In this document: positions 18,212-64,000 of the stretch, one piece after another
Position numbering within the stretch: position 1 is the stretch's first letter
Layout of the letters: the number at the start of each line of letters is the position of its first letter
From: Mytilus californianus
Taxonomy: Eukaryota
Direction: 5' to 3'
NCBI RefSeq assembly: GCF_021869535.1
Contig: NW_026262626.1
Location: 35,402,001 to 35,466,000, forward strand
Length of the DNA stretch: 64,000 bases
Notes under the pieces: model-generated
Told to the model about the DNA's origin: nothing
Seen by the model: only the letters and a program-made list of their open reading frames with translations
Databases searched by the model: none
Position numbers and translations under genes: made by a program

Positions 18212-21200
18212 CTGTAGAAAATATTATCCAAATTAGTTTTTCATCCAAATAATAAATATTTTTGTAGTTTTTGAATAATGGCAAAAAGTGTTCTGTTCTA
18301 TTTATGACAACTTACAGTACAAACATTTTGTAACTCTACCATAAGCATCTACTCAGAAGAAGCCATTTTGTATTAATATACTATACATATATATCAGGAT
18401 AAACATTGTACTAAGAACAATCATAAAACTTCTATCATTCCTTGATGCTGTCTGAAATATTTCTTTCTCTGTTTCAATGATTTAAGTCCACACTTTTTGT
18501 TTTGCTTTTTATTGCAGTTTCTAATTTGCTTGTTTATACTAGATATCTTCAATCTATATAGATTTAGATGTTGTCCAAACTGTATTTTAAGTGAGAAAAA
18601 AAAGATATTTTATATATGCAATACAGAACGCACATATGTAATACTGGGTACATATAAAATAAGGAGATGTGGTATGATTGCCAATGAGACAACTATCCAT
18701 CAAAGTTCAACTGAAGTGGATGTAGGCAATTTTAGGCAACTGTACCGCCTTCAACAATGAGACAAACCCATACCTTGGTAATGAATCCAACAGGGAAAGT
18801 AAAATTCTTCTGTTACAAGTCTTCATGTGTATAAATATAGATAGGAGTAAATTTCAATGATACAGCAACTCAAACAATTCTTAACAAATAAAAGAAGAAT
18901 GTGTCTGAGGACATGAATGCCCCCGCTCAAGCTTTGCAACAAAAATGAGATGGACATACGGAAAGACAGACGGTCAAGTTTCACTTAAAATGCCCTCGTC
19001 GCCTACGGCTGGGGCATAATAAAAGAAGAATTTGTCTGAGGACACAAATGCCCCGCTCAAGCTTTGCAACAAAAATGGGACGGATGGAAAGACAGGTTAA
19101 GGGTAACACTTAGTGCCTGGAAAAATGTGTTTGTGAGAAAGAGGTGGCGAAAATGAAAATTAACCCAGGTGAAACCCTAAACTGCCAAACAGATGAAGTA
19201 CAAATTGATCCTTTATAAACATGCGAAGAATCAATTCAACACAGAAAACGGAAAATATCATATCAAAACCAAATTCTACATACATAAAAATATTTAGTAC
19301 CTATGACAGTAACAGCCAAAATGCAAGTATAGGTGGGATAAATTCTTTTTAATCAGAATTGAAACACTTCTATTGTTGTTCTTGATAAGCTACTGTACCT
19401 ATTTTTAACAAGCCAGTAATCATTTCCACTTTCATCAGTACCATAGCCTATACATAATACTCCATGGTCTAAATTTTTACTGCTGCATTCTTCTTCGTCA
19501 TATACACCTACAAATAATATCATTTTTGTGTAATCAATTGGATTAAATTACAGCAAAAAAAAACATAAATAAACAAGTCAAATAAAACTTGATAGCGTGC
19601 TTTACCAACGAATTTTAATCATAATGCAAAGTGAACTTATCATATAATTAAAATGTATTTTTTTGGAAATGAATGCTTACAAAAATATATATAATATACA
19701 TGTTCAGGTAAGAGTAATGTAATTAACCAAGATTATTTAAAAAGATCAGGATTTGTAAGCAAAATGAGTGTCATGACTTGGGAAAACATTTGAAAAACTT
19801 CAGAAACACTTTTCATCTAGTCAATTTTTTTTCATGGATATTTTTTTCAGATTTTTCCTACACTGAAACATTGATTTAATAAAATGCTCCGCTGGGCGCA
19901 GCTTGATACGACCGCAGAGGTCGAACCCTGAACAGTTGGGGCAAGTATGTACACAACATTCAAGCTTGATACAGCACTGAATTTGGATTGTGATTAAATA
20001 TTTGACACAGCACAGAATGAATGTGGTCTAAGAACTGAATTTTTTTTAATTTACCTATTCAAACCATATCACTATTATTTGCTTTTATATATAAATCAGA
20101 AATAACCAATTTAAAAAGGAAAATTTTAAAGAAAAAAAAGGGGGAAAAAATCCCCCCTCAAATTTTTTGAACCCCCTTATTATTCATCACCCCCAAACTC
20201 AATCCCAGCCTTCCCTTTGTGTTACAATGTATGGTGCCTTGCAGTACAATTTCAGAGAGATCCGTACACTTCAACAAAGTTATTGTCTGGAAACTAGAAA
20301 AATGCTTGTTTTTTTTCCCCTTTTTGGCCCCAAATTCCTAAACGTTTAGGGCAATTACCTCCAAACTCAAACCCAGCTTTCCCTTTGTGATTTGGAACCT
20401 TGTTGTACAATTTCATAAAGATCCATACACTTACACACAAGTTATTGTCTGGAAACTAGAAAAATGCTTATTTTTGGCCCCCTTTTGGTCCCTTATTCCT
20501 AAACGTTTTGGGCAATTACCCCCAAACTCAATTCCAGCTTTCCCTTTGTGATATGGAACCTTGTAGTACAATTTCACAAAGATCCATACACTTACACACA
20601 AGTTATTGTCATGAAACTAGAAAAATGCTTGTTTTTTGCCCCTTTTTTGGCCCCTAATTCCTAAAATTTTGATGCAATTACCCCCAAAATCAATCCCAGC
20701 ATTCCCTTTGTGATATGGAACCTTGTGGTACAATGTCAGAGAGATCCATACACTAACACACAAGTTATGTCTGGAAGTTACAAAAATGCTTATTTTTGGC
20801 CCCTAATTTCTTAACTGTTGGTACCATAACCCCCAAAATCAATCCCAACCTTCCTTTTGTGGTATTGAACCTTGTGGTAAAATTTCATAGAGATCCTTTC
20901 ACTTAAACTAAAGTTAGAGTGCGAAAACTAATGTGTCTTCGGACGACGATGACGACGCCAACGTTATACCAATATACGACCACAAATTTTTTTTTGCTGT
21001 CGTATAAAAACAATCGTAAATATATGACATTCATTTGGATTATGGTCCTGATAAATCTACTTTATCTATAGCCTGGGGAAGTTATCAATTACAGGACAAT
21101 TTGGTAATAAATAAATGACAGTTAAGATTCATGAATCATCTATCATGTATCAAACTTTTATAGCATTTATTTAGACAATTATTTCTTGGAATTCTACAAT

Positions 21201-52239: not shown

Positions 52240-55200
52240 GTAATAAAATTGGCTAAGTTTTTTCCTTTTTGGGGTATTAGTCCAAATAATTACGACGTCT
52301 TTGACAGCTATTTTATTGTATTTGCTGTGATGATGCAGGATGCATCCCTTCATAAAATTAAAATAATAGAAAAACAAAAGGATATGGGTATATCCATCTA
52401 TGACACATAATCAATACTTGCACAGCAAAACAAACAAAAAGCAAAGGAACAGACTTTCAAGACATCAAAATTATTTGGAGTTAGGGTACATGCATTCATG
52501 AGGTCAGTTCACTTAAATTACATGATGGCCCATAGAGTGTATTGGGCCTATTTTCAAGAAGAAGAAAAATATGAAAAAAACGAGTGTTATTTCTGGGACT
52601 ATTATGTTAGTATAATCAAGATAATAGTCCCAGGTTATTTAATTTAATCACAATATAAATATTGTGTAATACATGTACATGTATTTCTTTAAGATTTGAA
52701 TTATTTAATAAACATTTATTAGGCAATTAAATATTATTATCATAAATGCATCTTCTGTCAAGAATGCATTGTGGGAATATCAAGACTATATTACAGAAAA
52801 TGTAACAGTTTGTAAAGTTTACACAAAGGACTTGTCAGTACATTTGCTTATCAGTTTGTTAAGTTAATAATGTAATTTGTCAAAGTAGTTATGAAAAATA
52901 AATACTTGCTAGTTTAATTAGCACCAATAATCAACACGTCTATATACTGAATTATTGTTCACCTGACAGTTTCTTAATTGTTTAGTTTGATTGATTGACT
53001 GATCAATGCCAGGTTAAGGATTCATGACATTCTACATGTTTTTGACAATTTTACTTTTTATTTTCCAACATAAATATTTTTACTTGTTCTGATTTCTAAA
53101 GAAAGTACTTTTATGTAACCTGGAAATATCTGAGGCCAAATAAAAAAATATGTGTGTTTCCTATTTCCCTACCTACCCTATATTTTAAGCCTAATAGAAA
53201 TAGCCTACCTTAAATTTTTTGTTGTTGTCATTTTTCAATAAGCACTGTTAAAGTCAGAATTTCTCTCCCATAAACTCAATGTAAAAAAAAAATTGTAAAA
53301 TAAAAAAAATTCCCTACCTATCTACCCTATTTTTTTCAAAGATGTAACAGGAAACACACATATTTTATTTGGCCTGAAAGAAAAAACTTCAAGATGAAAT
53401 GTTGACTAAAATCAGAGACATATAATACTATTGTACATCGTCGTCGTCCGAAGACATATTGGTTTTCGCACAATAACTTTAGTTTAAGTGAATGGATCTC
53501 TATGAAATTTTACCATAAGGTTCAATACCACAAAAGGAAGGTTGGGATTGATTTTGGGGGTTATCGTACCAACAGTTATGGAATTAGGGGCCAAAAATAA
53601 GCATTTTTGTAACTTCCAGACAATAACTTGTGTGTTAGTGTATGGATCTCTCTAACATTGTACCACAAGGTTCCATATCACAAAGGGAATGCTGGGATTG
53701 TTTTTGGGGGTAATTGCCTAAAAATTTTAGGAATTAGGGGCCAAAAAAGGGGCAAAAAACAAGCATTTTTCTAGTTTCATGACAATAACTTGTGTGTAAG
53801 TGTATGGATCTTTCTGAAATTGTACTACAAGGTTCCATATCACAAAGGGAAAGCTGGAATTGAGTTTGGGGGTAATTGCCCAAAACGTTTAGGAATAAGA
53901 GGCCAAGAAGGGGCCAAAGATGAGCATTTTTCTAGTTTCCAGACAATAACTTGTGTTCAAGTGTATGGATCTCTCTGAAATTGTACTGCAAGGTACCATA
54001 CCACAAAGGGAAGGCTGGGATTGATTTTGGGGGTAATTGCCTCAAAATTTTAGGAATTAGGGGCAAAAAACAAGCATTTTTCTAGTTTCAGGACAATAAC
54101 TTGTGTGTAAGTGTATGGATCTTTAAGAAATTGTACTACAAGGTTCCATATCACAAAGGGAAAGCTGGGTTTGAGTTTGGGGGTAATTGCCCTAAACGTT
54201 TAGGAATTTGGGGCCAAAAAGGTGCCAAAAAACAAGCATTTTTGGGTAAAGATTGCATGAAATGCAATTAAAACCCTATGGGACTGACTTGATGTTTAAA
54301 TCTTCCAAGGTTGATCACTACTTTTGGGATACACAAAATATAGTGCATTGATCATAACATTCTAAACATCCTATCCATTAACATTTCCAGAAATCTATCA
54401 ATGAAATATATGCTCAGATATTCAAGTTACAAAATGATATTATACTTGTCAAGAATATTACATACTTTGTGCAAGGTGCAGGAATCTAATATTTGTTCTA
54501 AGAATATCAATGATGTCATTGTTAAAGTAATCTTCAGAATTGGAGTTATCTTCCTTTGTTCATAATTGTAGTTGAATCAACTACAACCAGTGCTTTAAAC
54601 AATACTATGTTTAATTTTACTTCCCACTGATGAATTAAAGCAATCTTTACCCTTCAGTGCTTACAAACACTTTGATTCTAGTTTCCAGACAATAACTTGT
54701 GTTCAAGTGTATGGATCTCTCTGAAATTGTACTGCAAGGTACCATACCACAAAGGGAAGGCTGGGATTGAGTTTGGGGGTGATGAATCATAAGGGAGTTC
54801 AAAAAATTTGGGGGGGTGATTTTTTTTTCCTTTTTTTCCTTTTTTTTTTTTTTTAAATTTTCCATTTAAGTTTGTTATTTCTGATTTATATATAAAAGCA
54901 AATAATAATGATATGGTTTGATTTCATCAAAAATTGAAATATTGGGGTTCTTTGATATGCTGAATCTAACCGTGTATTTAGATTCTCAATTTTTGGTCCC
55001 GTTTTCAAATTGGTCTACATTAAGGTCCAAAGGGTCAAAAATTTAACTTATTTTGATTTTGACAAAAATTGAATTCTTGGGGTTCTTTGATATGCTGAAT
55101 CTAAACATGTATTTAGATTTTTGATTGTGGGCCCAGTTTTCAAGTTGGTCCAAATCAGGGTCCAAAATTACACTTTGTTTGATTTCAACAAAAATTGAAT

Positions 55201-58200
55201 ATATGGGGTTCTTTGATATGCTGAATCTAACCATGTATTTAGATTTTTGGATGTTAGGCCTCGTTTTAAAATTTATCCACATTGAGGTCCGAAAGGTCCA
55301 AAATTAAACTTTGTTTGATTTCATTAAAAATTTAATTATGGGGGTTCTTTGATATGCTGAGAGTTTTGGTCCCAACACGAATGTGGGACCAAAAAAGGGC
55401 CCAAATAAACATTTTTCTAGTTTTCAGACAATAACTTGTGGAATGGTGTATGGATCTCTCTGAAATTATACCACAAGTTTCCATACCACAAAGAGATGGT
55501 AAGAATTGGCTTTGGGGGGTTATGGCTCACACCGTTAAGGAATAAGGGGCAAAAAGGGGGAAAACAAGGGTTTCCAGGTTTATGGACAATTAAGTACAAA
55601 ACATAATTTAAAGCAGTGTAAGGTTGGTAATTCAAACTCATTTGAATATCTCAGCTACACTGGTTTTAAATTATGTATATTGGAAATTTGCCAATAACTT
55701 TAGTATTAATAAATTCTATTGGAAATTTGCCAATAACTTTTAGTATAATAAACTCCATTGGAAATTTGCCAATATAAAATGTTGCTGATGAAGGTTTTTT
55801 GTTTATTTTTAGCCATGACTATGATGTCATTTTCTATTTTAATAGCCTTATGATGTATTTAAATTTTTTAATACTTTTATTATGTATTTAAATGGGCTTT
55901 TATGGTTGCAAATTTATTTAGGTTGTAATTCAAACTCATTTGAATATCTCAGCTACACTGGTTTTAAATTATGTATATTGGAAATTTGCCAATAACTTTA
56001 GTATTAATAAATTCTATTGGAAATTTGCCAATAACTTTTAGTATAATAAACTCCATTGGAAATTTGCCAATATAAAATGTTGCTGATGAAGGTTTTTTGT
56101 TTATTTTTAGCCATGACTATGATGTCATTTTCTATTTTAATACCTTTATGATGAATTTAAATGGGCTTTTATGGTTCCAAAGGAATTTTATTTTTAGATA
56201 TTACTGTAAAATGTTGCTGATTTTTTGTTTATTTTTAGCCATGACTATGCTGTCATTTTCTATTTTAATACCTTTATGATGTATTTAAATGGGCTGATAT
56301 GGTTGCAAAGGAATTTTACTACAAAGGGAAGACTGCAATTGAGTTTGATGGTTAATGCTAAGATCTTTGACCACATTTATTTTGTGTCGGAAACCTATAT
56401 TATGTCAAAAATTTGATCAAAATCAAACAAACTATGGTACATCTTGAGTTCTAGTCCACTGATCATCCTGAAATTTTTACACTTTATTATTTTACCATTA
56501 TAAGATGTTTTGAAATGGTAAAAAAAAGTAGCATGGTCCAACCTGTTCAAAACTAGAGATCACCTGGATAAAAAAAAATGATAGTTTTCACTTAATTTGA
56601 TTTGGACTTTTATATATTGAAAAAGCAGTATACATATTGATCATTGTGTTCATTCTCACTTTGTTTCTGCAACTCCTTGTAAATTAGACACTTGATTTCA
56701 ATGTAACTTTTACTAAATATTCAGTATCTAATGATGTACACCTATTGTAATTTATTATTCAAATGATAGTTGGAATATCCCATTATAAAAAGTACACTTG
56801 CATTGACATGTCTAGAAAAGGGTTCGACGTCTTGTTTCCACAACTCCACCTATAGACACAACCTTAATTCAATAAAACTTCTATAAACTCTTTCTTACAC
56901 AATTACATTGTGCATTCTATTTTTCCTGAAGCAAAACGTGCTTTGCAATATCTATAGAATTGGGGAGTGAGAGGTTTGCATGTTAAATCTAACAAAAGGA
57001 CCAAAATGAAATTTCTTTTTTTAAAGTCGGATTTGGATACAGATTTTTTGCAGTTTACCCCTTTGAATAGTCTGCTGTGGGATTGTATTTTCCAATTGTT
57101 TGTAGTTCTTACAATTTCCAAATATAAGGAGCTGTTTAAAGCCAATTACTATGTAAATAAAGCCTTTTTGCATTCTCACTGTTGTAATACACTTGATCAA
57201 TCTCCCCTTGCATTGTTTGTCAACACATGATCCTTGGTGTTTCTATAAATATTAAAATATTACAACATGATATCAACTATTGAACATTTCAATTTCAGGT
57301 GTACAAATTAAATCTCAAGTCAGATTTTATGCAAGAAAAAGGATGGTACTTAATTTTGACTTTTCAGGTAACTATAATAAATTATTACATAAGTTACAGT
57401 TAATTTAAAACTGTATATCCTCACCATATACACCTTTTCACATTAATGATAGTCATTCATGTATTCATGGCTGAAAATAGCTTATGAGAGTGATCCATGT
57501 TGGTTTTTTTATAGTCTTCTGCAATTCTCCATGTCATGAAGTTTTAGGTAACCCATAACAATACGTCAATAGACCTTTGTACACACTGTACATGTGCTTA
57601 CACATGTTACATGGATCTGACAACGTACCATTCTACTTTCTGTTCTGATATTTTAATATGTTCATCAACCAATCAAATTTTTACATCCAAATTTTGAAGA
57701 GCAGCATCTGAAATAGCAACAAAACCATAGGATCCCAAAAACATGGAAAAGGTCTATTATACAGAAAATAAAAAAAATAAAAAATATGACTAATGTAATT
57801 ACAGTGTGGACGCAGGATCTGTATTTCAATCAGATTACTCTTAGGTATGACCAATGTAAGTACAGTGTGGACACAGGATCTGTATTTCAGTCAGATTACT
57901 CTTAGGTACCCGGTATGACCAATGTAAGTACAGTGTGGACACAGGATCTGTATTTCAATCAGATTACTCTTAGGTATGACCAATGTAAGTACAGTGTGGA
58001 CACAGGATCTGTATTTCAGTCAGATTACTCTTAGGTATGACCAACAGAAGTAATATGGATTGAGTTGTCTTAATACCTTTGGTTTGAAATTACCACAAAA
58101 AGTGCATGTTCTATATTAACACTTCACTGGTCACACTGCATGTTATTTTGCACTTTTATTATGGTTTGTTGTTCCTCTTCATCTTATTAAATTGTTAATT

Positions 58201-61200
58201 AAAAGTTATAATTCTCTTTTTATGTAGGTGATTTGGTAAAGGAAACAGATAAGGTTAACAAAGAGGAATTATTTTTCCCATTCAAAGAAATTGGAGGTTT
58301 AGAAGAGTAAGTGATAAGTAAATCATAAAACAGTCTGTAAAGAGTCCAGAAGGAAAGGTCTCAGATAAAATCCATATGTCCAAAAATTAGAGATGGACAT
58401 GGCTCATCACATTTGCATTGTACTAGTATTACTTCGTAAAATAATAATGTTGTATGTTACATATTTAGTAATCTTCTTTTATAAATATAAGGTTTTGAAA
58501 GGGAAGTAAATATCAATTTCTTTCACTCTTGGATGCCCAAGGGTGCAATCAACAGTTTTTATACGACCGCAAAAATTGCAGTCGTATATTGGTATGACGT
58601 TGGAGTCGTCGTCCTCGTAGTCCGAAGACACATTGGTTTTTGCACAATAACTTTAGTTTAAGTGAATGGATCTCTATGAAATTTTACCATAAGGTTCAAT
58701 ACCACAAAAGGAAGGTTCGGATTAATTTTGGGGGTTATGGTACCAACAGTTAAGGAAAAAGGGGCCAAAAATAATCATTTTTGTAACTTCCAGACAATAA
58801 CTTGTGTTTAAGTGTATGGATCTCTCTGAAATTATACCACAAGTTTCCATACCACTAAGGGATGGTTAGGATTTGCTTTGGGGGGTTATGGCTCAAACCG
58901 TTTAGGAATTAGGGGCAAAAAAAGGGGGAAAAACAAGGGTTTCCTGGTTTATGGACAATTTAAAAGCAGTGTAATTTCAGAAATTAAACAATATAATTTC
59001 TATATGTCAATACGTCAATACGCAACAGCATAGTGTATTGCACAAAAGCAAAAAAAAAATGGGTTAATTTTTATTTATTTTGGGGGGGGGATCAATTCGC
59101 ACAGGCACAGTGTATTGCACAAAAGCAAAAAAATTGAATATAAATTCAAATCATATAACTAATTCTAAGTTCTTTGACTACAGCTATTCTGTGTCAGAAA
59201 CCTATTATTTGTCAAATATTTAATTTCAATCCAAATTCAGACCTGTATCAAGCGTGAATATTGTGTCCATTTTTGTCCCAACTGTTCAGGGTTGGACCTC
59301 TGCGGTCGTATCCAGCTGCGCTCGGCGAAGCAATTTATTTATACTTGATGTCATACTTTGAGGGACCATGCATAAGTGACCTCTAAGTGGAGGTTTATAT
59401 AATTACTTGTTTAAAACAAGATATCACTGGCATCAGCATATTCTCTAGTTTTTAGTGAAATAAAAATATTGTGTAAGTTTAACATACTAAAAATGTTCTG
59501 CACTTAGAAAAATGATAAAAAAAATTGCCCTCTCCCAAGATGAAAAAATCTGCAATCAGTTCATGTGTACACCCATGTAGACACAATACAGGCACATTTC
59601 AGATAATACAAAATATGTGTCATGCTGCATGAATTTCATAGATTTTTACCTAGTTTTTTCTGAAAAAGTCTCATTCTACGGCTCAGAAATGAGCTTAAGT
59701 AGTTATTAACTAGTTTTCAATTTTCCCTACAAAAAAACCCAGAAAGTTTATATCTCTACTAATTTTTAATATCATTTTGATTATTGAACATGTTTTAATG
59801 GAAAGCTAACTAGCAAATTCTAACTATCAATTACAAAAAAAGACATGAAACTTCTCCACCAATTATTAGATAAGCAGTGGCTTACCTCCAAGGCAATTTT
59901 TATTTTGGGAATAACTCTTAGTACTTTATATAAAACTGTTGATAGCAACCCAAGATATCATTCTCATCAGACCAGATTGTGGTAATGGTCCTTGTAGATT
60001 ATAGTTAATATGACTAAGTTAAATAATTATGTTTTTCATAAACAAGACATTTTTTCAAACACTGTGATTGTCAGTATATCTTATTGAAAATAAATAAATG
60101 TCCTGGAAAATTCTCAAACATTTTGTTGCAAAAGAATTGAAATCATCTGCAGTAAAAGTTCACAAATATTAAAGAATCAGGAATCTTAAGAATTCCACTG
60201 GCCTTTTATACAGTTAAAGACTGTCTACTACAGATTAAATAAATGTCTAAGATTATAACAATAGTAATAATTATCAATTTTGCAATTGTTTTTAAAGTTG
60301 TTCAAACTTGTTAAACAGTTATGGAAATGTATACGTAAATTGGTCTTATCTAATCTTCTGTCTATATCTACATGTTTTCAAAGTTACACCAGATAAAAAA
60401 ACTAAACCTTCATATAACTATGGATGTTTTCCTTGATATATTATTTTGTAGATTCGCAAATGTTTTGTATACAAGCCAATAGACATTTGATTTGTTGTGG
60501 AACAGTTAAATGTTGTGATTTCCCTTTACCAAGGAAATGAATGAAAATTGGTAACCCACACATAATAATGAATCCACAGTAATGTATGTATTTGTTTATA
60601 TTTACAGTGTAGATGATACTGTTAAAAGACTCCTCAGTTTGGAGTTCTGTGACTCAGTAATGTATGTAATTGTTTATATTTACAGTGTAGATGATACTGT
60701 TAAAAGACTCCTCAGTTTGGAGTTCTGTGACTCAGAGTAATGTATGTAATTGTTTATATTTACAGTGTAGATGATACTGTTAAAAGACTCCTCAGTTTGG
60801 AGTTCTGTGACACGTTAAAAGACTCCTCAGTTTGGAGTTCTGTGACACGTTAAAAGACTCCTCAGTTTGGAGTTCTGTGACTCAGTAATGTATGTAATTG
60901 TTTATATTTACAGTGTAGATGATACTGTTAAAAGACTCCTCAGTTTTGAGTTCTTTGACTCAGTAATGTATGTAATTGTTTATATTTACAGTGTAGATGA
61001 TACTGTTAAAAGACTCCTCAGTTTGGAGTTCTGTGACTCAGAGTAATGTATGTAATTGTTTATATTTACAGTGTAGATGATACTGTTAAAAGACTCCTCA
61101 GTTTGGAGTTCTGTGACTCAGTAATGTATGTAATTGTTTATATTTACAGTGTAGATGATACTGTTAAAAGACTCCTCAGTTTGGAGTTCTGTGACTCAGA

Positions 61201-63504
61201 GTAATGTATGTAATTGTTTATATTTACAGTGTAGATGATACTGTTTAAAGACTCCTCAGTTTGGAGTTCTGTGACTCAATAATGTATGTAATTGTTTATA
61301 TTTACAGTGTAGATGATACTGTTAAAAGACTCCTCAGTTTGGAGTTCTGTGACACGTTAAAAGACTCCTCAGTTTGGAGTTCTGTGACTCAGTAATGTAT
61401 GTAATTGTTTATATTTACAGTGTAGATGATACTGTTAAAAGACTCCTCAGTTTGGAGTTCTGTGACTCCGTAATGTATGTAATTGTTTATATTTACAGTG
61501 TAGATGATACTGTTAAAAGACTCCTCAGTTTGGAGTTCTGTGACTCAGTAATGTATGTAATTGTTTATATTTACAGTGTAGATGATACTGTTAAAAGACT
61601 CCTCAGTTTGGAGTTCTGTGACTCAGAGTAATGTATGTAATTGTTTATATTTACAGTGTAGATGATACTGTTAAAAGACTCCTCAGTTTGGAGTTCTGTG
61701 ACACATTAAAAGACTCCTCAGTTTGGAGTTCTGTGACTCAGTAATGTATGTAATTGTTTATATTTACAGTGTAGATGATACTGTTAAAAGACTCCTCAGT
61801 TTGGAGTTCTGTGACTCAGTAATGTATGTAATTGTTTATATTTACAGTGTAGATGATACTGTTAAAAGACTCCTCAGTTTGGAGTTCTGTGACTCAGAGT
61901 AATGTATGTAATTGTTTATATTTACAGTGTAGATGATACTGTTTAAAGACTCCTCAGTTTGGAGTTCTGTGACTCAGTAATGTATGTAATTGTTTATATT
62001 TACAGTGTAGATGATACTGTTAAAAGACTCCTCAGTTTGGAGTTCTGTGACTCAGAGTAATGTATGTAATTGTTTATATTTACAGTGTAGATGATACTGT
62101 TAAAAGACTCCTCAGTTTGGAGTTCTGTGACACGTTAAAAGACTCCTCAGTTTGGAGTTCTGTGACTCAGTAATGTATGTAATTGTTTATATTTACAGTG
62201 TAGATGATACTGTTAAAAGACTCCTCAGTTTGGAGTTCTGTGACTCAGAGTAATGTATGTAATTATAGAATAACTAATCGAAGAATTCAAATAGAGAAAA
62301 ATATTCAACGAGTGACCGAACAACACATTAATTCACGAATGCGCGTAGCGCATGAGTTAATTATCAGTGTTGTTCGGTCACGAGTTGAATATTTTTCGAT
62401 ATTTGAATTCTTTGATTAGTTATTCTTTTTATTACATTGGCAAATGGCTTTTTTATGAAATTAAAGTAGAAACTGTAAGGAACTATATCTTTTTCTACGC
62501 ATTCACAATTTGTTTTGATCCGACGTTATCGACGTCTTGACAACGCCTATTGTTGTATGACGTCAGAGGAGTGAAATAACCACGTTTATTTCACATGTGA
62601 AATTATCGGTTTTTATTTCACTGGGAAATCAATATAATTCATTGCAACCAATGTAATAATTGTTTATATTTACAGTGTAGATGATACTGTTAAAAGACTC
62701 CTCAGTTTGGAGTTCTGTGACTCAGTAATGTATGTAATTGTTTATATTTACAGTGTAGATGATACTGTTAAAAGACTCCTCAGTTTGGAGTTCTGTGACT
62801 CAGTAATGTATGTAATTGTTTATATTTACAGTGTAGATGATACTGTTATAAGGCTCCTCAGTTTGGAGTTTTGTGACTCAGTAATGTATGTAATTGTTTA
62901 TATTTAGTGTAGATGATACTGTTAAAAGACTCCTCAGTTTGGAGTTCTGTGACTCAGAGTAATGTATGTAATTGTTTATATTTACAGTGTAGATGATACT
63001 GTTTAAAGACTCCTCAGTTTGGAGTTCTGTGACACAGTAATGTATGTAATTGTTTATATTTACAGTGTAGATGATACTGTTAAAAGACTCCTCAGTTTGG
63101 AGTTCTGTGACTCAGTAATGTATGTAATTGTTTATATTTAGTGTAGATGATACTGTTAAAAGACTCCTCAGTTTGGAGTTCTGTGACTCAGAGTAATGTA
63201 TGTAATTGTTTATATTTACAGTGTAGATGATACTGTTTAAAGACTCCTCAGTTTGGAGTTCTGTGACTCAATAATGTATGTAATTGTTTATATTTACAGT
63301 GTAGATGATACTGTTAAAAGACTCCTCAGTTTGGATTTCTGTGACTCAGTAATGTATGTAATTGTTTATATTTACAGTGTAGATGATACTGTTAAAAGAC
63401 TCCTCAGTTTGGAGTTCTGTGACTCAGTAATGTATATAATTGTTTATATTTACAGTGTAGATGATACTGTTAAAAGACTCCTCAGTTTGGAGTTTTGTGA
63501 CTCA
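52068..63504 (+). CDS. MRPS15: Mitochondrial ribosomal protein uS15m, 5' part (3' exons beyond the window): join(52068..52239,58228..58306,63456..63504), exon-3 copy choice uncertain
   Basis: The spliced product ...[44 protein letters not shown] matches the uS15m motif (human [21 protein letters not shown], from memory). Phases 1 and 2 match across the introns. The N-terminus is Arg/Ser/Thr-rich with no acidic residues, like a mitochondrial presequence. Confidence 0.88.
53435..54240 (-). mobile_element. HINE-like family A piece with five ~160-bp subunits in MRPS15 intron 1
   Basis: Reverse complement of the subunits at 20200-20950. Confidence 0.78.
54655..55660 (-). mobile_element. Further HINE-family fragments, including a second subunit type (gatttcatcaaaaattgaatattggggttctttgatatgctgaatctaacc, about four copies)
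   Basis: Repeated subunits of ~120 bp at 54920-55360, flanked by family A sequence. Confidence 0.65.
55627..56320. repeat. 298-bp direct duplication plus a partial third copy
   Basis: gtaattcaaactcatttgaatatctcagctacac at 55627 and 55925. Confidence 0.9.
57785..58043. repeat. 61-bp minisatellite, ~4 copies, in MRPS15 intron 1
   Basis: acagtgtggacacaggatctg at 57801 (variant ...gacgcagg...), 57862, 57930 (7-nt insertion before it) and 57991. Confidence 0.93.
58228..58306 (+). CDS. MRPS15: MRPS15 exon 2
   Basis: ctctttttatgtag|(G)[25 protein letters not shown](D)|gtaagt; phase 1 in, phase 2 out. Confidence 0.85.
58556..59340 (-). mobile_element. HINE-like element family A in MRPS15 intron 2
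   Basis: tttttatacgaccgcaaaaattgcagtcgtata hairpin ... tgcggtcgtatccagctgcgctcggcgaagca. Confidence 0.78.
62265..62656. mobile_element. Non-autonomous foldback/MITE- or HINE-like element inserted in the exon array
   Basis: About 390 bp interrupting one unit; TAATT on both sides; long hairpin ~62267-62427; second inverted repeat ttattacattgg/ccaatgtaataa. Confidence 0.75.
63456..63504 (+). CDS. MRPS15: MRPS15 exon 3 (49 nt), last copy of the array and the only one with a canonical donor
   Basis: tatttacag|(D)[16 protein letters not shown]|gtaagt. Confidence 0.8.
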
Positions 63505-63563
63505 GTAAGTAATATAACAATGGTCTAAACATAAAAAATTTCAAATGATTTAATGGATCAAAC

Positions 63564-64000
63564 TTTTTATGCCCCCGCCGTAGCAGAAGGGGCATTAAGT
63601 TTTACCCTTGTCCGTCTGTAAGTCCGTCCGTATGTCCCAAAATTGGTTTCCGTTCTCTAACTTTAGTTTGCCTCAACCAAATGATATAAAACTTATACAC
63701 AATGCCTATTACCACAAAACACAGATCAAGTACTAATTTTGGCGGCGTCACTTTTACTGTTCTAGAGTTATGCCCCTTTACAAATGGAAAAATTGCTGAA
63801 ATATTCGTTTCTGTTCTCTAACTTTAGTTTGCCTCAACCAATGTTATGAAAATTATGCACAATGCGAATTACCATAAAACACAGAACAAGTTTGAATTTT
63901 GGTGGCGTCACTTTTACTGTTCTAGAGTTATGCCCTTTACAAATGGAAAAATTGCTGAATTTTTCGTTTCCGTTCTCTGACTTAAGTTTGCCTCAATTAA
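63564..64000 (-). mobile_element. HINE-like element family B with ~155-bp subunits, running off the window end
   Basis: tttttatgcccccgccgtagcagaaggggcat; repeated ttccgttctctaactttagtttgcctcaacc; related copies at 27710-28100 and 18890-19110 in the opposite orientation. Confidence 0.7.

What the first reader, a model, noticed from the sequence alone, without database searches (positions are those of the whole stretch)
60579..63510. A coding exon of an essential mitoribosomal gene amplified into a ~30-copy minisatellite, each copy with its own splice acceptor
Seen in sequence: the 78-bp unit is 29 nt of intron ending in tatttacAG plus a 49-nt exon. The exon continues the phase-2 end of MRPS15 exon 2 (GA|T) to give [17 protein letters not shown]. 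Internal copies are followed by the weak donor GTAATG; only the last copy (63456-63504) has GTAAGT. Established: this peptide matches the conserved uS15m motif, and a 29-nt intron is far below the normal minimal spliceosomal intron size. Inference: the spliceosome faces about 30 near-identical competing exons in a housekeeping gene and must choose one 49-nt copy, or a frame-preserving combination. This would be a natural exon-VNTR testing ground for exon definition, probably length-polymorphic between alleles.
Basis: partly seen in the sequence, partly recalled or inferred. Interest (0 to 1): 0.92.

Follow-up and report, generated by a model that had tools for sequence, protein, structure and literature searches.

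The report
Exon-plus-splice-site minisatellite in MRPS15 intron
A 49-base coding exon of a mitochondrial ribosomal protein gene, with its splice acceptor, has been copied 30 times in tandem, yet RNA reads show only the last copy, the one with a good splice donor, in the mRNA; this makes it a large whole-exon example of the known "mirage" type of splice-site minisatellite.

Summary
The array is real. It has 30 full units of 76-80 nt, each made of 29 nt of intron ending in AG plus a 49-nt exon copy. It also has 5 truncated 35-nt units. It spans 60579-63504 and is split by a ~385-bp repeated element.

The spliced peptide hits only uS15m chains in the PDB (best E 0.013), so an MRPS15-like gene is likely.

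Raw RNA-seq (X23) gives 37 reads whose overhang before 63456 equals 58277-58306 exactly. Depth is about 41 on the last copy and zero on the ten other copies laid. That includes two acceptors whose use would give in-frame, stop-free products that NMD would not remove.

The last copy's donor pairs with U1 at -7.2 kcal/mol, like the gene's other donors. Internal donors give -2.9 or -3.7, and six units have no GT. Four copies carry an in-frame TAA.

So the spliceosome does not visibly sample the copies. The internal ones are silent, decaying pseudo-exons inside a 5.1-kb intron.

The closest known cases are amphioxus "mirages" and the human F7, IFI6, CBS, LMNB2 and PDGF boundary minisatellites. The new point is that a whole exon with both boundaries is inside the unit.

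Length polymorphism was not tested. The scan has unchecked notes of many other splice-site minisatellites elsewhere in this genome.

The parts
57299..57367 (+). Putative upstream coding exon (..VQIKSQVRFYARKRMVLNFDFS), donor GTAACT; no in-frame ATG, so not the first exon
   Evidence: Frame analysis; U1 duplex -8.0 kcal/mol; not checked with RNA
58228..58306 (+).
   Evidence: Its last 30 nt (58277-58306, unique in the window) are the consensus overhang of 37 RNA reads joined to 63456. Its 5' end is inferred from the acceptor and frame
60579..62264 (+). Array block 1: units 1-19 (78 or 80 nt) plus 5 truncated 35-nt units; silent pseudo-exons
62265..62649 (.). Repeated element inserted in the 29-nt intron part of a unit; 60-nt inverted arms at 62267-62326 and 62367-62426; flanked by an imperfect 12-13-nt direct duplication of unit sequence
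   Evidence: Very high word depth in all runs, so it is a dispersed repeat. The element-to-array junction and the following unit are present without mismatch in an independent DNA run (X26 contig at 62660-62767)
62650..63426 (+). Array block 2: units 20-29; silent pseudo-exons with zero RNA depth
63427..63455 (+). Last 29 nt of the real intron (polypyrimidine tract and AG) in front of the used exon
   Evidence: RNA overhangs start exactly at 63456
63456..63504 (+). The exon actually used: last copy, TTT variant, 49 nt, phase 2 in, phase 0 out
   Evidence: RNA depth about 41, strand consistent with a + strand gene, 37 reads carrying the exon-58306 overhang
63505..63510 (+). Authentic 5' splice site GTAAGT
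   Evidence: U1 duplex -7.2 kcal/mol against -2.9 or -3.7 for internal units. The depth in the bin 63484-63541 is accounted for by the exon bases alone, so RNA depth falls to about 0 after 63504

Best explanation
This is a 'mirage'-type minisatellite: a tandem array that grew from a 78-nt segment holding the last 29 nt of an intron plus the whole 49-nt exon of an MRPS15-like gene.

Origin. The segment is bounded on both sides by the same short sequence, CAGTAA. It occurs once 29 nt upstream of the acceptor and once across the exon end and donor. Slippage or unequal exchange between these microhomologies probably made the first duplication, and unequal exchange then expanded it. Different unit variants on the two sides of the inserted element show that turnover continued after the insertion.

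Splicing. Every copy inherited the acceptor and polypyrimidine tract. Only the 3'-most copy abuts the true donor, GTAAGT. Internal copies are followed by the start of the next unit (GTAATG, GA+GTAATG, ATAATG or nothing). These pair poorly with U1, and the next AG lies only 29 nt away. Under exon definition only the last copy can be recognised as an exon, so the donor at 58306 is spliced to 63456. The other 29 copies, the truncated units and the inserted element are removed as part of a 5.1-kb intron.

Status of the internal copies. They are neutral passengers that are decaying, with stop codons, missense changes, lost GT and deletions.

Shown: the array, the 58306-to-63456 junction, absence of RNA on the ten internal copies laid, and the donor strengths. 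Inferred: exon definition as the cause, the microhomology origin, and neutrality.
For: Gene identity: phmmer of the 65-aa spliced peptide against the PDB returns 7 hits, all uS15m, best E 0.013. Identity runs across the junction, [11 protein letters not shown].

Splicing: raw RNA run X23 gives 37 reads with an overhang before 63456. The 30-nt overhang consensus (agreement 0.97) is exactly and uniquely 58277-58306. Bin depths of 19.6 and 15.1 convert to about 41 reads over 63456-63504 only. Depth is 0 in every bin from 62672 to 63425. The first mate lies on the - strand, which fits a + strand gene.

Use of the acceptors of units 29 or 28 with the true donor would give in-frame, stop-free products of 127 or 205 nt. 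These should escape NMD, so their absence is informative.

U1 duplex energies: -7.2 for the last copy, -8.0 and -7.2 for the gene's other donors, -2.9 and -3.7 for internal units, and 6 units without GT.

Decay: 4 copies with TAA, 5 kinds of missense change, 5 truncated units.

The array is not an assembly artefact. It has unit variants in a higher-order pattern and an inserted element. An independent DNA run has a mismatch-free contig from the element's right-hand junction through unit 20 into unit 21, at word depth 121 against about 5-12 for other listed contigs. A related species (organism B) has a 110-nt contig across a +GA unit and a TAA unit with 1 mismatch.

Precedent: boundary minisatellites that leave splicing undisturbed are described in PMC1557585, PMC3087553 and PMC3902484.
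Against: Only one raw RNA run was available, about 6% of it was read, and it represents one sample. Only the last 11 units could be laid, because the tool refuses more than 12 copies. Units 1-19 were therefore judged only through identical copies in block 2.

Assignment to the last copy rests on a single diagnostic base (C>T at exon position 40) plus the absence of reads on identical internal copies.

The tool warns that holes in depth are weak evidence. The DNA contigs also left most of the array uncovered.

Out-of-frame products from the other internal acceptors would be removed by NMD and could be missed.

The overhang behind 63504 was not among the rows shown, and the next exon lies beyond the window. 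The frame into the next exon and the S15 domain were therefore not seen.

Gene identity rests on a 27-residue match at E 0.013.
Confidence: 0.77

Rival explanations
1. The copies are live alternatives. Different cells, tissues or alleles splice 58306 to different copies (mutually exclusive use giving the same peptide), or include several copies or 51-nt +GA units to add 17- or 26-residue repeats.
For: All 30 copies keep an AG acceptor with the same polypyrimidine tract. Only one RNA sample was examined.
Against: There are zero RNA reads on ten internal copies against about 41 on the last. With 0 of 41, usage above roughly 7% is unlikely in that sample. Internal donors pair weakly with U1, or are absent. 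The 29-nt spacing is too short for splicing between neighbouring copies (general knowledge of minimal intron size). Four copies have TAA.
Confidence: 0.08
2. The array has a regulatory role. Its 29 pseudo-exons, with good acceptors and weak donors, act as decoy exons that bind U2AF/U2 and some U1, slow removal of this intron and tune MRPS15 output. Array length would be the tuning knob.
For: Decoy exons with weak 5' splice sites that are recognised but rarely spliced are known to promote intron retention in OGT, ARGLU1 and SF3B1 (PMC12017769). The internal units have that architecture. The array is shared with a related species.
Against: There is no sign of intron retention: RNA depth is about 0 on the array and just downstream of 63504 in X23. 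The units show decay with no sign of constraint. The scan notes many similar arrays in unrelated genes of this genome (unchecked), which fits a mutational process better than a gene-specific function.
Confidence: 0.08
3. The array is an assembly artefact, or its copy number is inflated. The genome really has one or a few copies.
For: Tandem arrays are error-prone in assemblies. No spanning long reads could be examined. Short-read contigs cannot count copies.
Against: Units differ in a structured way, with +GA, a deleted AC, TAA and truncated forms in a higher-order pattern, and a dispersed repeat is inserted inside the array. Independent DNA and RNA runs, including one from a second species, hold unit-to-unit junctions and the element-to-array junction without mismatch. 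Word depth of the array contig is about 10-20 times that of other listed contigs.
Confidence: 0.05

Closest known systems
[quoted passage not shown] 2002, not held)
   Same: The tandem units span an exon-intron boundary and carry AG/GT signals. Normal splicing is undisturbed. Units evolve in concert with divergent edge units. BflGb6 duplicates the 3' end of an intron plus the start of the exon, as here. The phenomenon seems recurrent within one genome.
   Different: Here the unit holds a complete exon with both boundaries, so each unit is a formal pseudo-exon. There are 30 copies, against 3-6 in BflGb6. The host is a different animal, whose repeats and sequence suggest a bivalve mollusc (my impression, not tested). 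Length instability was not tested here.
Human boundary minisatellites: F7 IVS7 37-bp VNTR, IFI6 (6-16) intron 2, CBS IVS13, LMNB2, PDGF intron 4 (PMC1557585)
   Same: The minisatellite grew from an exon-intron boundary and reiterates a splice site many times (25 pseudo-sites in 6-16). The exon-adjacent authentic site is used and the pseudo-sites stay silent.
   Different: Those arrays reiterate identical 5' splice sites downstream of the exon, and choice is explained by 5'-to-3' scanning for the first site. Here acceptors and whole exon bodies are reiterated upstream, the internal donors are not identical to the real one, and the last copy is chosen.
Tandem exon duplication with mutually exclusive splicing (general knowledge; short-intron steric exclusion as in alpha-tropomyosin)
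   Same: Tandem copies of one exon, with spacing too short for neighbours to be spliced together.
   Different: No alternative use is seen in RNA. The copies are near-identical and decaying rather than diversified. Spacing is 29 nt and the copy number is 30.
Decoy exons in detained introns (OGT, ARGLU1, SF3B1; PMC12017769)
   Same: Intronic exon-like units with usable 3' splice sites and weak 5' splice sites that are almost never included.
   Different: Decoy exons are single, conserved elements shown to cause intron retention. Here no retention is seen and no function is shown.

Membership tests
Mirage-type (exon-boundary) minisatellite | Head-to-tail tandem array with a minisatellite-sized unit | tested here: met
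   78-bp period, 30 full and 5 truncated units, TRF scores 1300-2100
Mirage-type (exon-boundary) minisatellite | The unit spans an exon-intron boundary of an expressed gene, so splice signals are reiterated | tested here: met
   The acceptor boundary at 63455/63456 is used in 37 RNA reads. The exon depth ends at 63504. The unit is 29 nt of intron plus 49 nt of exon
Mirage-type (exon-boundary) minisatellite | Regular splicing is not disturbed; only the authentic copy appears in mRNA | tested here: met
   Depth is about 41 on the last copy and 0 on ten internal copies in raw RNA run X23.
Mirage-type (exon-boundary) minisatellite | Length instability or allelic length polymorphism | not tested
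F7 IVS7-type array of identical 5' pseudo-sites | The first monomer spans the exon end, and identical donors are reiterated downstream of the authentic one | tested here: not met
   The authentic exon is the last unit, and internal donors differ from the authentic one (GTAATG against GTAAGT)
Mutually exclusive tandem exons | Different copies are used alternatively in mature mRNA | tested here: not met
   No RNA reads on internal copies. Limited to one run and to block 2
uS15m / MRPS15 | Conserved N-terminal extension motif ([12 protein letters not shown]) of mitochondrial S15 | tested here: met
   phmmer against the PDB: 7 of 7 hits are uS15m, best E 0.013, aligned residues 37-63
uS15m / MRPS15 | Ribosomal S15 domain (Pfam Ribosomal_S15) | not testable with these tools
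   The downstream exons lie beyond the window end at 64000. Pfam scan of the 65-aa peptide found nothing. The homologue search was blank because of its length window

The most novel reading that the evidence does not exclude
This genome may carry a whole population of mirage-type splice-site minisatellites; the scan holds at least ten unchecked notes of this kind. This one would be the extreme form, a complete exon reiterated 30 times. If so, the species is a natural library of decoy splice sites in essential genes. This array could also be more than a passenger: a length-variable brake on MRPS15 splicing through decoy-exon binding, or raw material for in-frame 26-residue repeat insertions, since units 28-30 are stop-free in frame.
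Probability: 0.12. Interest if true: 0.75.

Novelty: new variant of a known kind. Interest (0 to 1): 0.5.

Why it matters
The array is a natural experiment on splice-site choice. Thirty acceptors with identical polypyrimidine tracts and near-identical exon bodies lie in one intron of a housekeeping gene, and the cell uses the one backed by a U1-competent donor. That is the outcome exon definition predicts. It complements the human F7-type arrays, where identical donors are resolved by position.

It extends 'mirage' minisatellites, so far described mainly in amphioxus, to another animal lineage and to a whole-exon unit.

It also warns annotators. The 78-nt unit is open in frame, so gene predictors and short-read aligners can place this exon on the wrong copy or invent repeat proteins.

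Tried and rejected
I followed the tool's own advice and laid the part with 11 copies. The first 19 units were therefore never laid.
- The search for homologous proteins with the 65-aa spliced peptide found no candidate. Given the 0.55-1.75 length window, this says nothing about full-length MRPS15. I did not pad or chimerise the query to get round the window.
- The Pfam scan of the peptide was blank, as expected, because the S15 domain is encoded beyond the window.
- Rfam on 55000-64000 found no family, so there is no intronic snoRNA or similar.
- The bacterial promoter/terminator scan is irrelevant here and was blank.
- The original mirage paper (PMC117041) is not held, so its content is cited only through PMC3087553 and PMC3902484.
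- I did not try to locate the ATG exon upstream of 57299 without RNA support.
Full report
**1. What is in the sequence**

Tandem Repeats Finder reports a 78-bp period array over 60577-62264 and 62650-63508, with scores of 1300-2100. A tolerant pattern scan of the whole 64-kb window finds 30 starts of the exon-like segment, from 60608 to 63456, and none outside the array.

Each full unit has two parts. The first is 29 nt that end in a polypyrimidine tract and AG (tttacag in 28 units, tatttag in 2). The second is 49 nt which, entered in phase 2, read [17 protein letters not shown].

What follows each 49-mer varies:

| What follows the 49-mer | Number of units |
|---|---|
| GTAATG | 14 |
| Extra GA, then GTAATG (80-nt units) | 9 |
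| ATAATG | 2 |
| A truncated 35-nt unit, with no donor | 4 |
| GTAAGT (last unit only, 63456-63504) | 1 |

There are 5 truncated 35-nt units in all. Four copies carry an in-frame TAA, and five kinds of missense change are present.

A ~385-bp element with 60-nt inverted arms (62267-62326 and 62367-62426) is inserted in the intron part of one unit. It is flanked by an imperfect 12-13-nt direct duplication of unit sequence.

**2. Which gene**

The exon ending at 58306 starts at 58228. A further putative exon at 57299-57367 continues the frame upstream, but it has no in-frame ATG.

The 65-residue product of the three pieces was searched against all PDB chains. The seven hits up to E 10 are all mitochondrial uS15m (human, pig, cow, mouse), best E 0.013. 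Near-identity runs across the splice junction: [11 protein letters not shown].

Pfam has nothing for this N-terminal part. The large protein search was blank because of its length window. The S15 domain itself must be encoded beyond 64000. I take MRPS15-like identity as likely, at about 0.9, but not proven.

**3. Which copy is used**

On the tool's advice I laid 62266-64000, which holds the inserted element, the last 11 units and the downstream flank.

Results for the one raw RNA-seq run (X23, paired Illumina, about 6% read):
- 37 reads have an unaligned overhang immediately before 63456.
- The 30-nt consensus of that overhang (agreement 0.97) is found exactly once in the window, at 58277-58306. 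This is a direct 58306-to-63456 junction.
- Bin depths of 19.6 and 15.1 convert to about 41 reads over the 49 exon bases and about zero beside them.
- All of these reads have the first mate on the - strand, as expected for a + strand gene.
- Every bin from 62672 to 63425 has depth 0.

Reads from canonical TTC copies would have fitted units 20, 21, 25 or 29 perfectly. The tool does lay records inside the array, as shown by contigs at 62685-62783, 62660-767 and 63154-263. Zero of about 41 therefore puts internal-copy use below roughly 7% in this sample.

One point strengthens this. Splicing to the acceptors of unit 29 or 28 with read-through to the true donor would give in-frame, stop-free exons of 127 or 205 nt. 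NMD would not hide such products, yet they are not seen.

Caveats:
- One run and one sample.
- Assignment to the last copy depends on one diagnostic base.
- The tool itself warns that holes in depth are weak evidence.
- The overhang behind 63504 was not among the rows printed, so the next exon was not seen.

**4. Why the last copy**

All acceptors are equivalent. Each internal copy even has the previous exon copy in the position where the last copy has its likely branch region. The difference lies at the donor.

Pairing with the conserved 5' end of U1 snRNA (textbook sequence, ViennaRNA duplexfold) gives these energies:

| Donor | U1 duplex (kcal/mol) |
|---|---|
| Last copy (63505) | -7.2 |
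| Gene's donor at 57367 | -8.0 |
| Gene's donor at 58306 | -7.2 |
| Internal 78-nt units | -2.9 |
| Internal +GA units | -3.7 |
| Six internal units | no GT at all |

In addition, the next AG is only 29 nt from any internal donor. That is below the usual minimal intron length in animals (general knowledge).

Under exon definition, a 3' splice site is confirmed by a U1-bound donor across the exon. Only the last unit qualifies. This step is inference; a minigene test is given under next steps.

**5. Origin and dynamics**

The sequence just before the first unit reads ..ccaCAGTAATGTA... The sequence at the end of the last unit reads ..actCAGTAAGTAA... The array is thus delimited by a 6-nt microhomology that occurred 78 nt apart in the ancestral single-copy gene. 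This is the expected footprint of slippage or unequal exchange.

Unit variants are arranged in higher-order patterns. Truncated-unit types occur only left of the inserted element, and units lacking AC occur only right of it. The TAA+ATAATG variant occurs on both sides. Expansion or conversion therefore continued after the insertion.

**6. Reality of the array**

Besides the structured variants and the inserted element, independent data support it:
- A DNA run from another study (X26) has a mismatch-free 108-nt contig from the element's right-hand junction through unit 20 into unit 21. Its word depth is 121, against about 5-12 for other listed contigs.
- An RNA-labelled run (X1) has a mismatch-free 99-nt contig across a unit junction.
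- A run from a related species (organism B, X4) has a 110-nt contig across a +GA unit and a TAA unit with one mismatch.

Copy number and allelic length were not measurable with the tools allowed.

**7. Comparison with what is known**

Minisatellites that grow from an exon-intron boundary and reiterate a splice site are established.
- In humans they occur in F7 IVS7, IFI6 (6-16, with 25 pseudo-sites), CBS IVS13, LMNB2 and PDGF. The authentic or first site is used (PMC1557585).
- In amphioxus they are called "mirages" (Adh3, globins, TnC, PGBD5). Acceptor-side cases exist, they leave splicing intact and they vary in length (PMC3087553; PMC3902484).

The present array meets the tested mirage criteria. 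It differs in three ways: the unit contains an entire exon with both boundaries, the copy number is high, and the animal lineage is different. It does not fit the F7 type (identical donors downstream) or mutually exclusive exons (no alternative use seen).

A decoy-exon role, as in OGT (PMC12017769), is conceivable. Nothing here supports it: no intron retention was seen and the units are decaying.

The scan's own unchecked notes list many further splice-site minisatellites elsewhere in this genome. This points to a genome-wide mutational tendency rather than a gene-specific device. I could not test those notes.

**8. Verdict**

The feature is real and correctly located. The dramatic reading of 30 competing exons is replaced by a simpler one: a mirage-type array whose internal units are silent pseudo-exons, with the authentic exon as the last unit.

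It is a new variant of a known kind. It is a useful natural test case for exon definition and an annotation trap, and its overall interest is moderate.

Noticed in passing
window:4249-8538: A 4.3-kb minisatellite of about 125 copies of a 34-bp unit (CAACGAACAGAAGAATCAGCCAAGACAATCCTGC), with higher GC (0.45) and strong A-over-T skew. It may be coding or simply a satellite.
   Followed up: no
window:63564-64000: A dispersed repeat starts about 60 nt after the authentic donor; many contigs and reads break at 63564 and 63646. It contains 160-bp tandem repeats (63642-63996) with extreme word depth in all DNA and RNA runs of both species, and stranded RNA reads. It looks like an abundant satellite-bearing mobile element.
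   Followed up: partly
window:62265-62649: The element inserted in the array has a 60-nt-arm foldback at its left end and is very abundant in the genome. RNA reads on it come mostly from the strand opposite to the gene and are 90-95% alike, so they derive from other copies.
   Followed up: partly
window:57785-58044: A 61/129-bp tandem repeat (about 4 copies) lies in the preceding intron, 184 nt upstream of the exon at 58228. It contains GTAAGTACAG motifs but has no similarity to the neighbouring exons.
   Followed up: no
window:58644-58922, 53470-54243, 20189-20916: Related repeats with a period of about 150-160 bp recur at several places in the window, on both strands. They are probably the same family of satellite-carrying elements.
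   Followed up: no
window:62676-62906 and 63300-63504: Because 78 is a multiple of 3 and the 29-nt spacer has no stop in frame, runs of 78-nt units form open reading frames of up to 77 codons (..SVMYVIVYIYS.. linkers). Gene predictors could mistake these for a repeat protein.
   Followed up: yes
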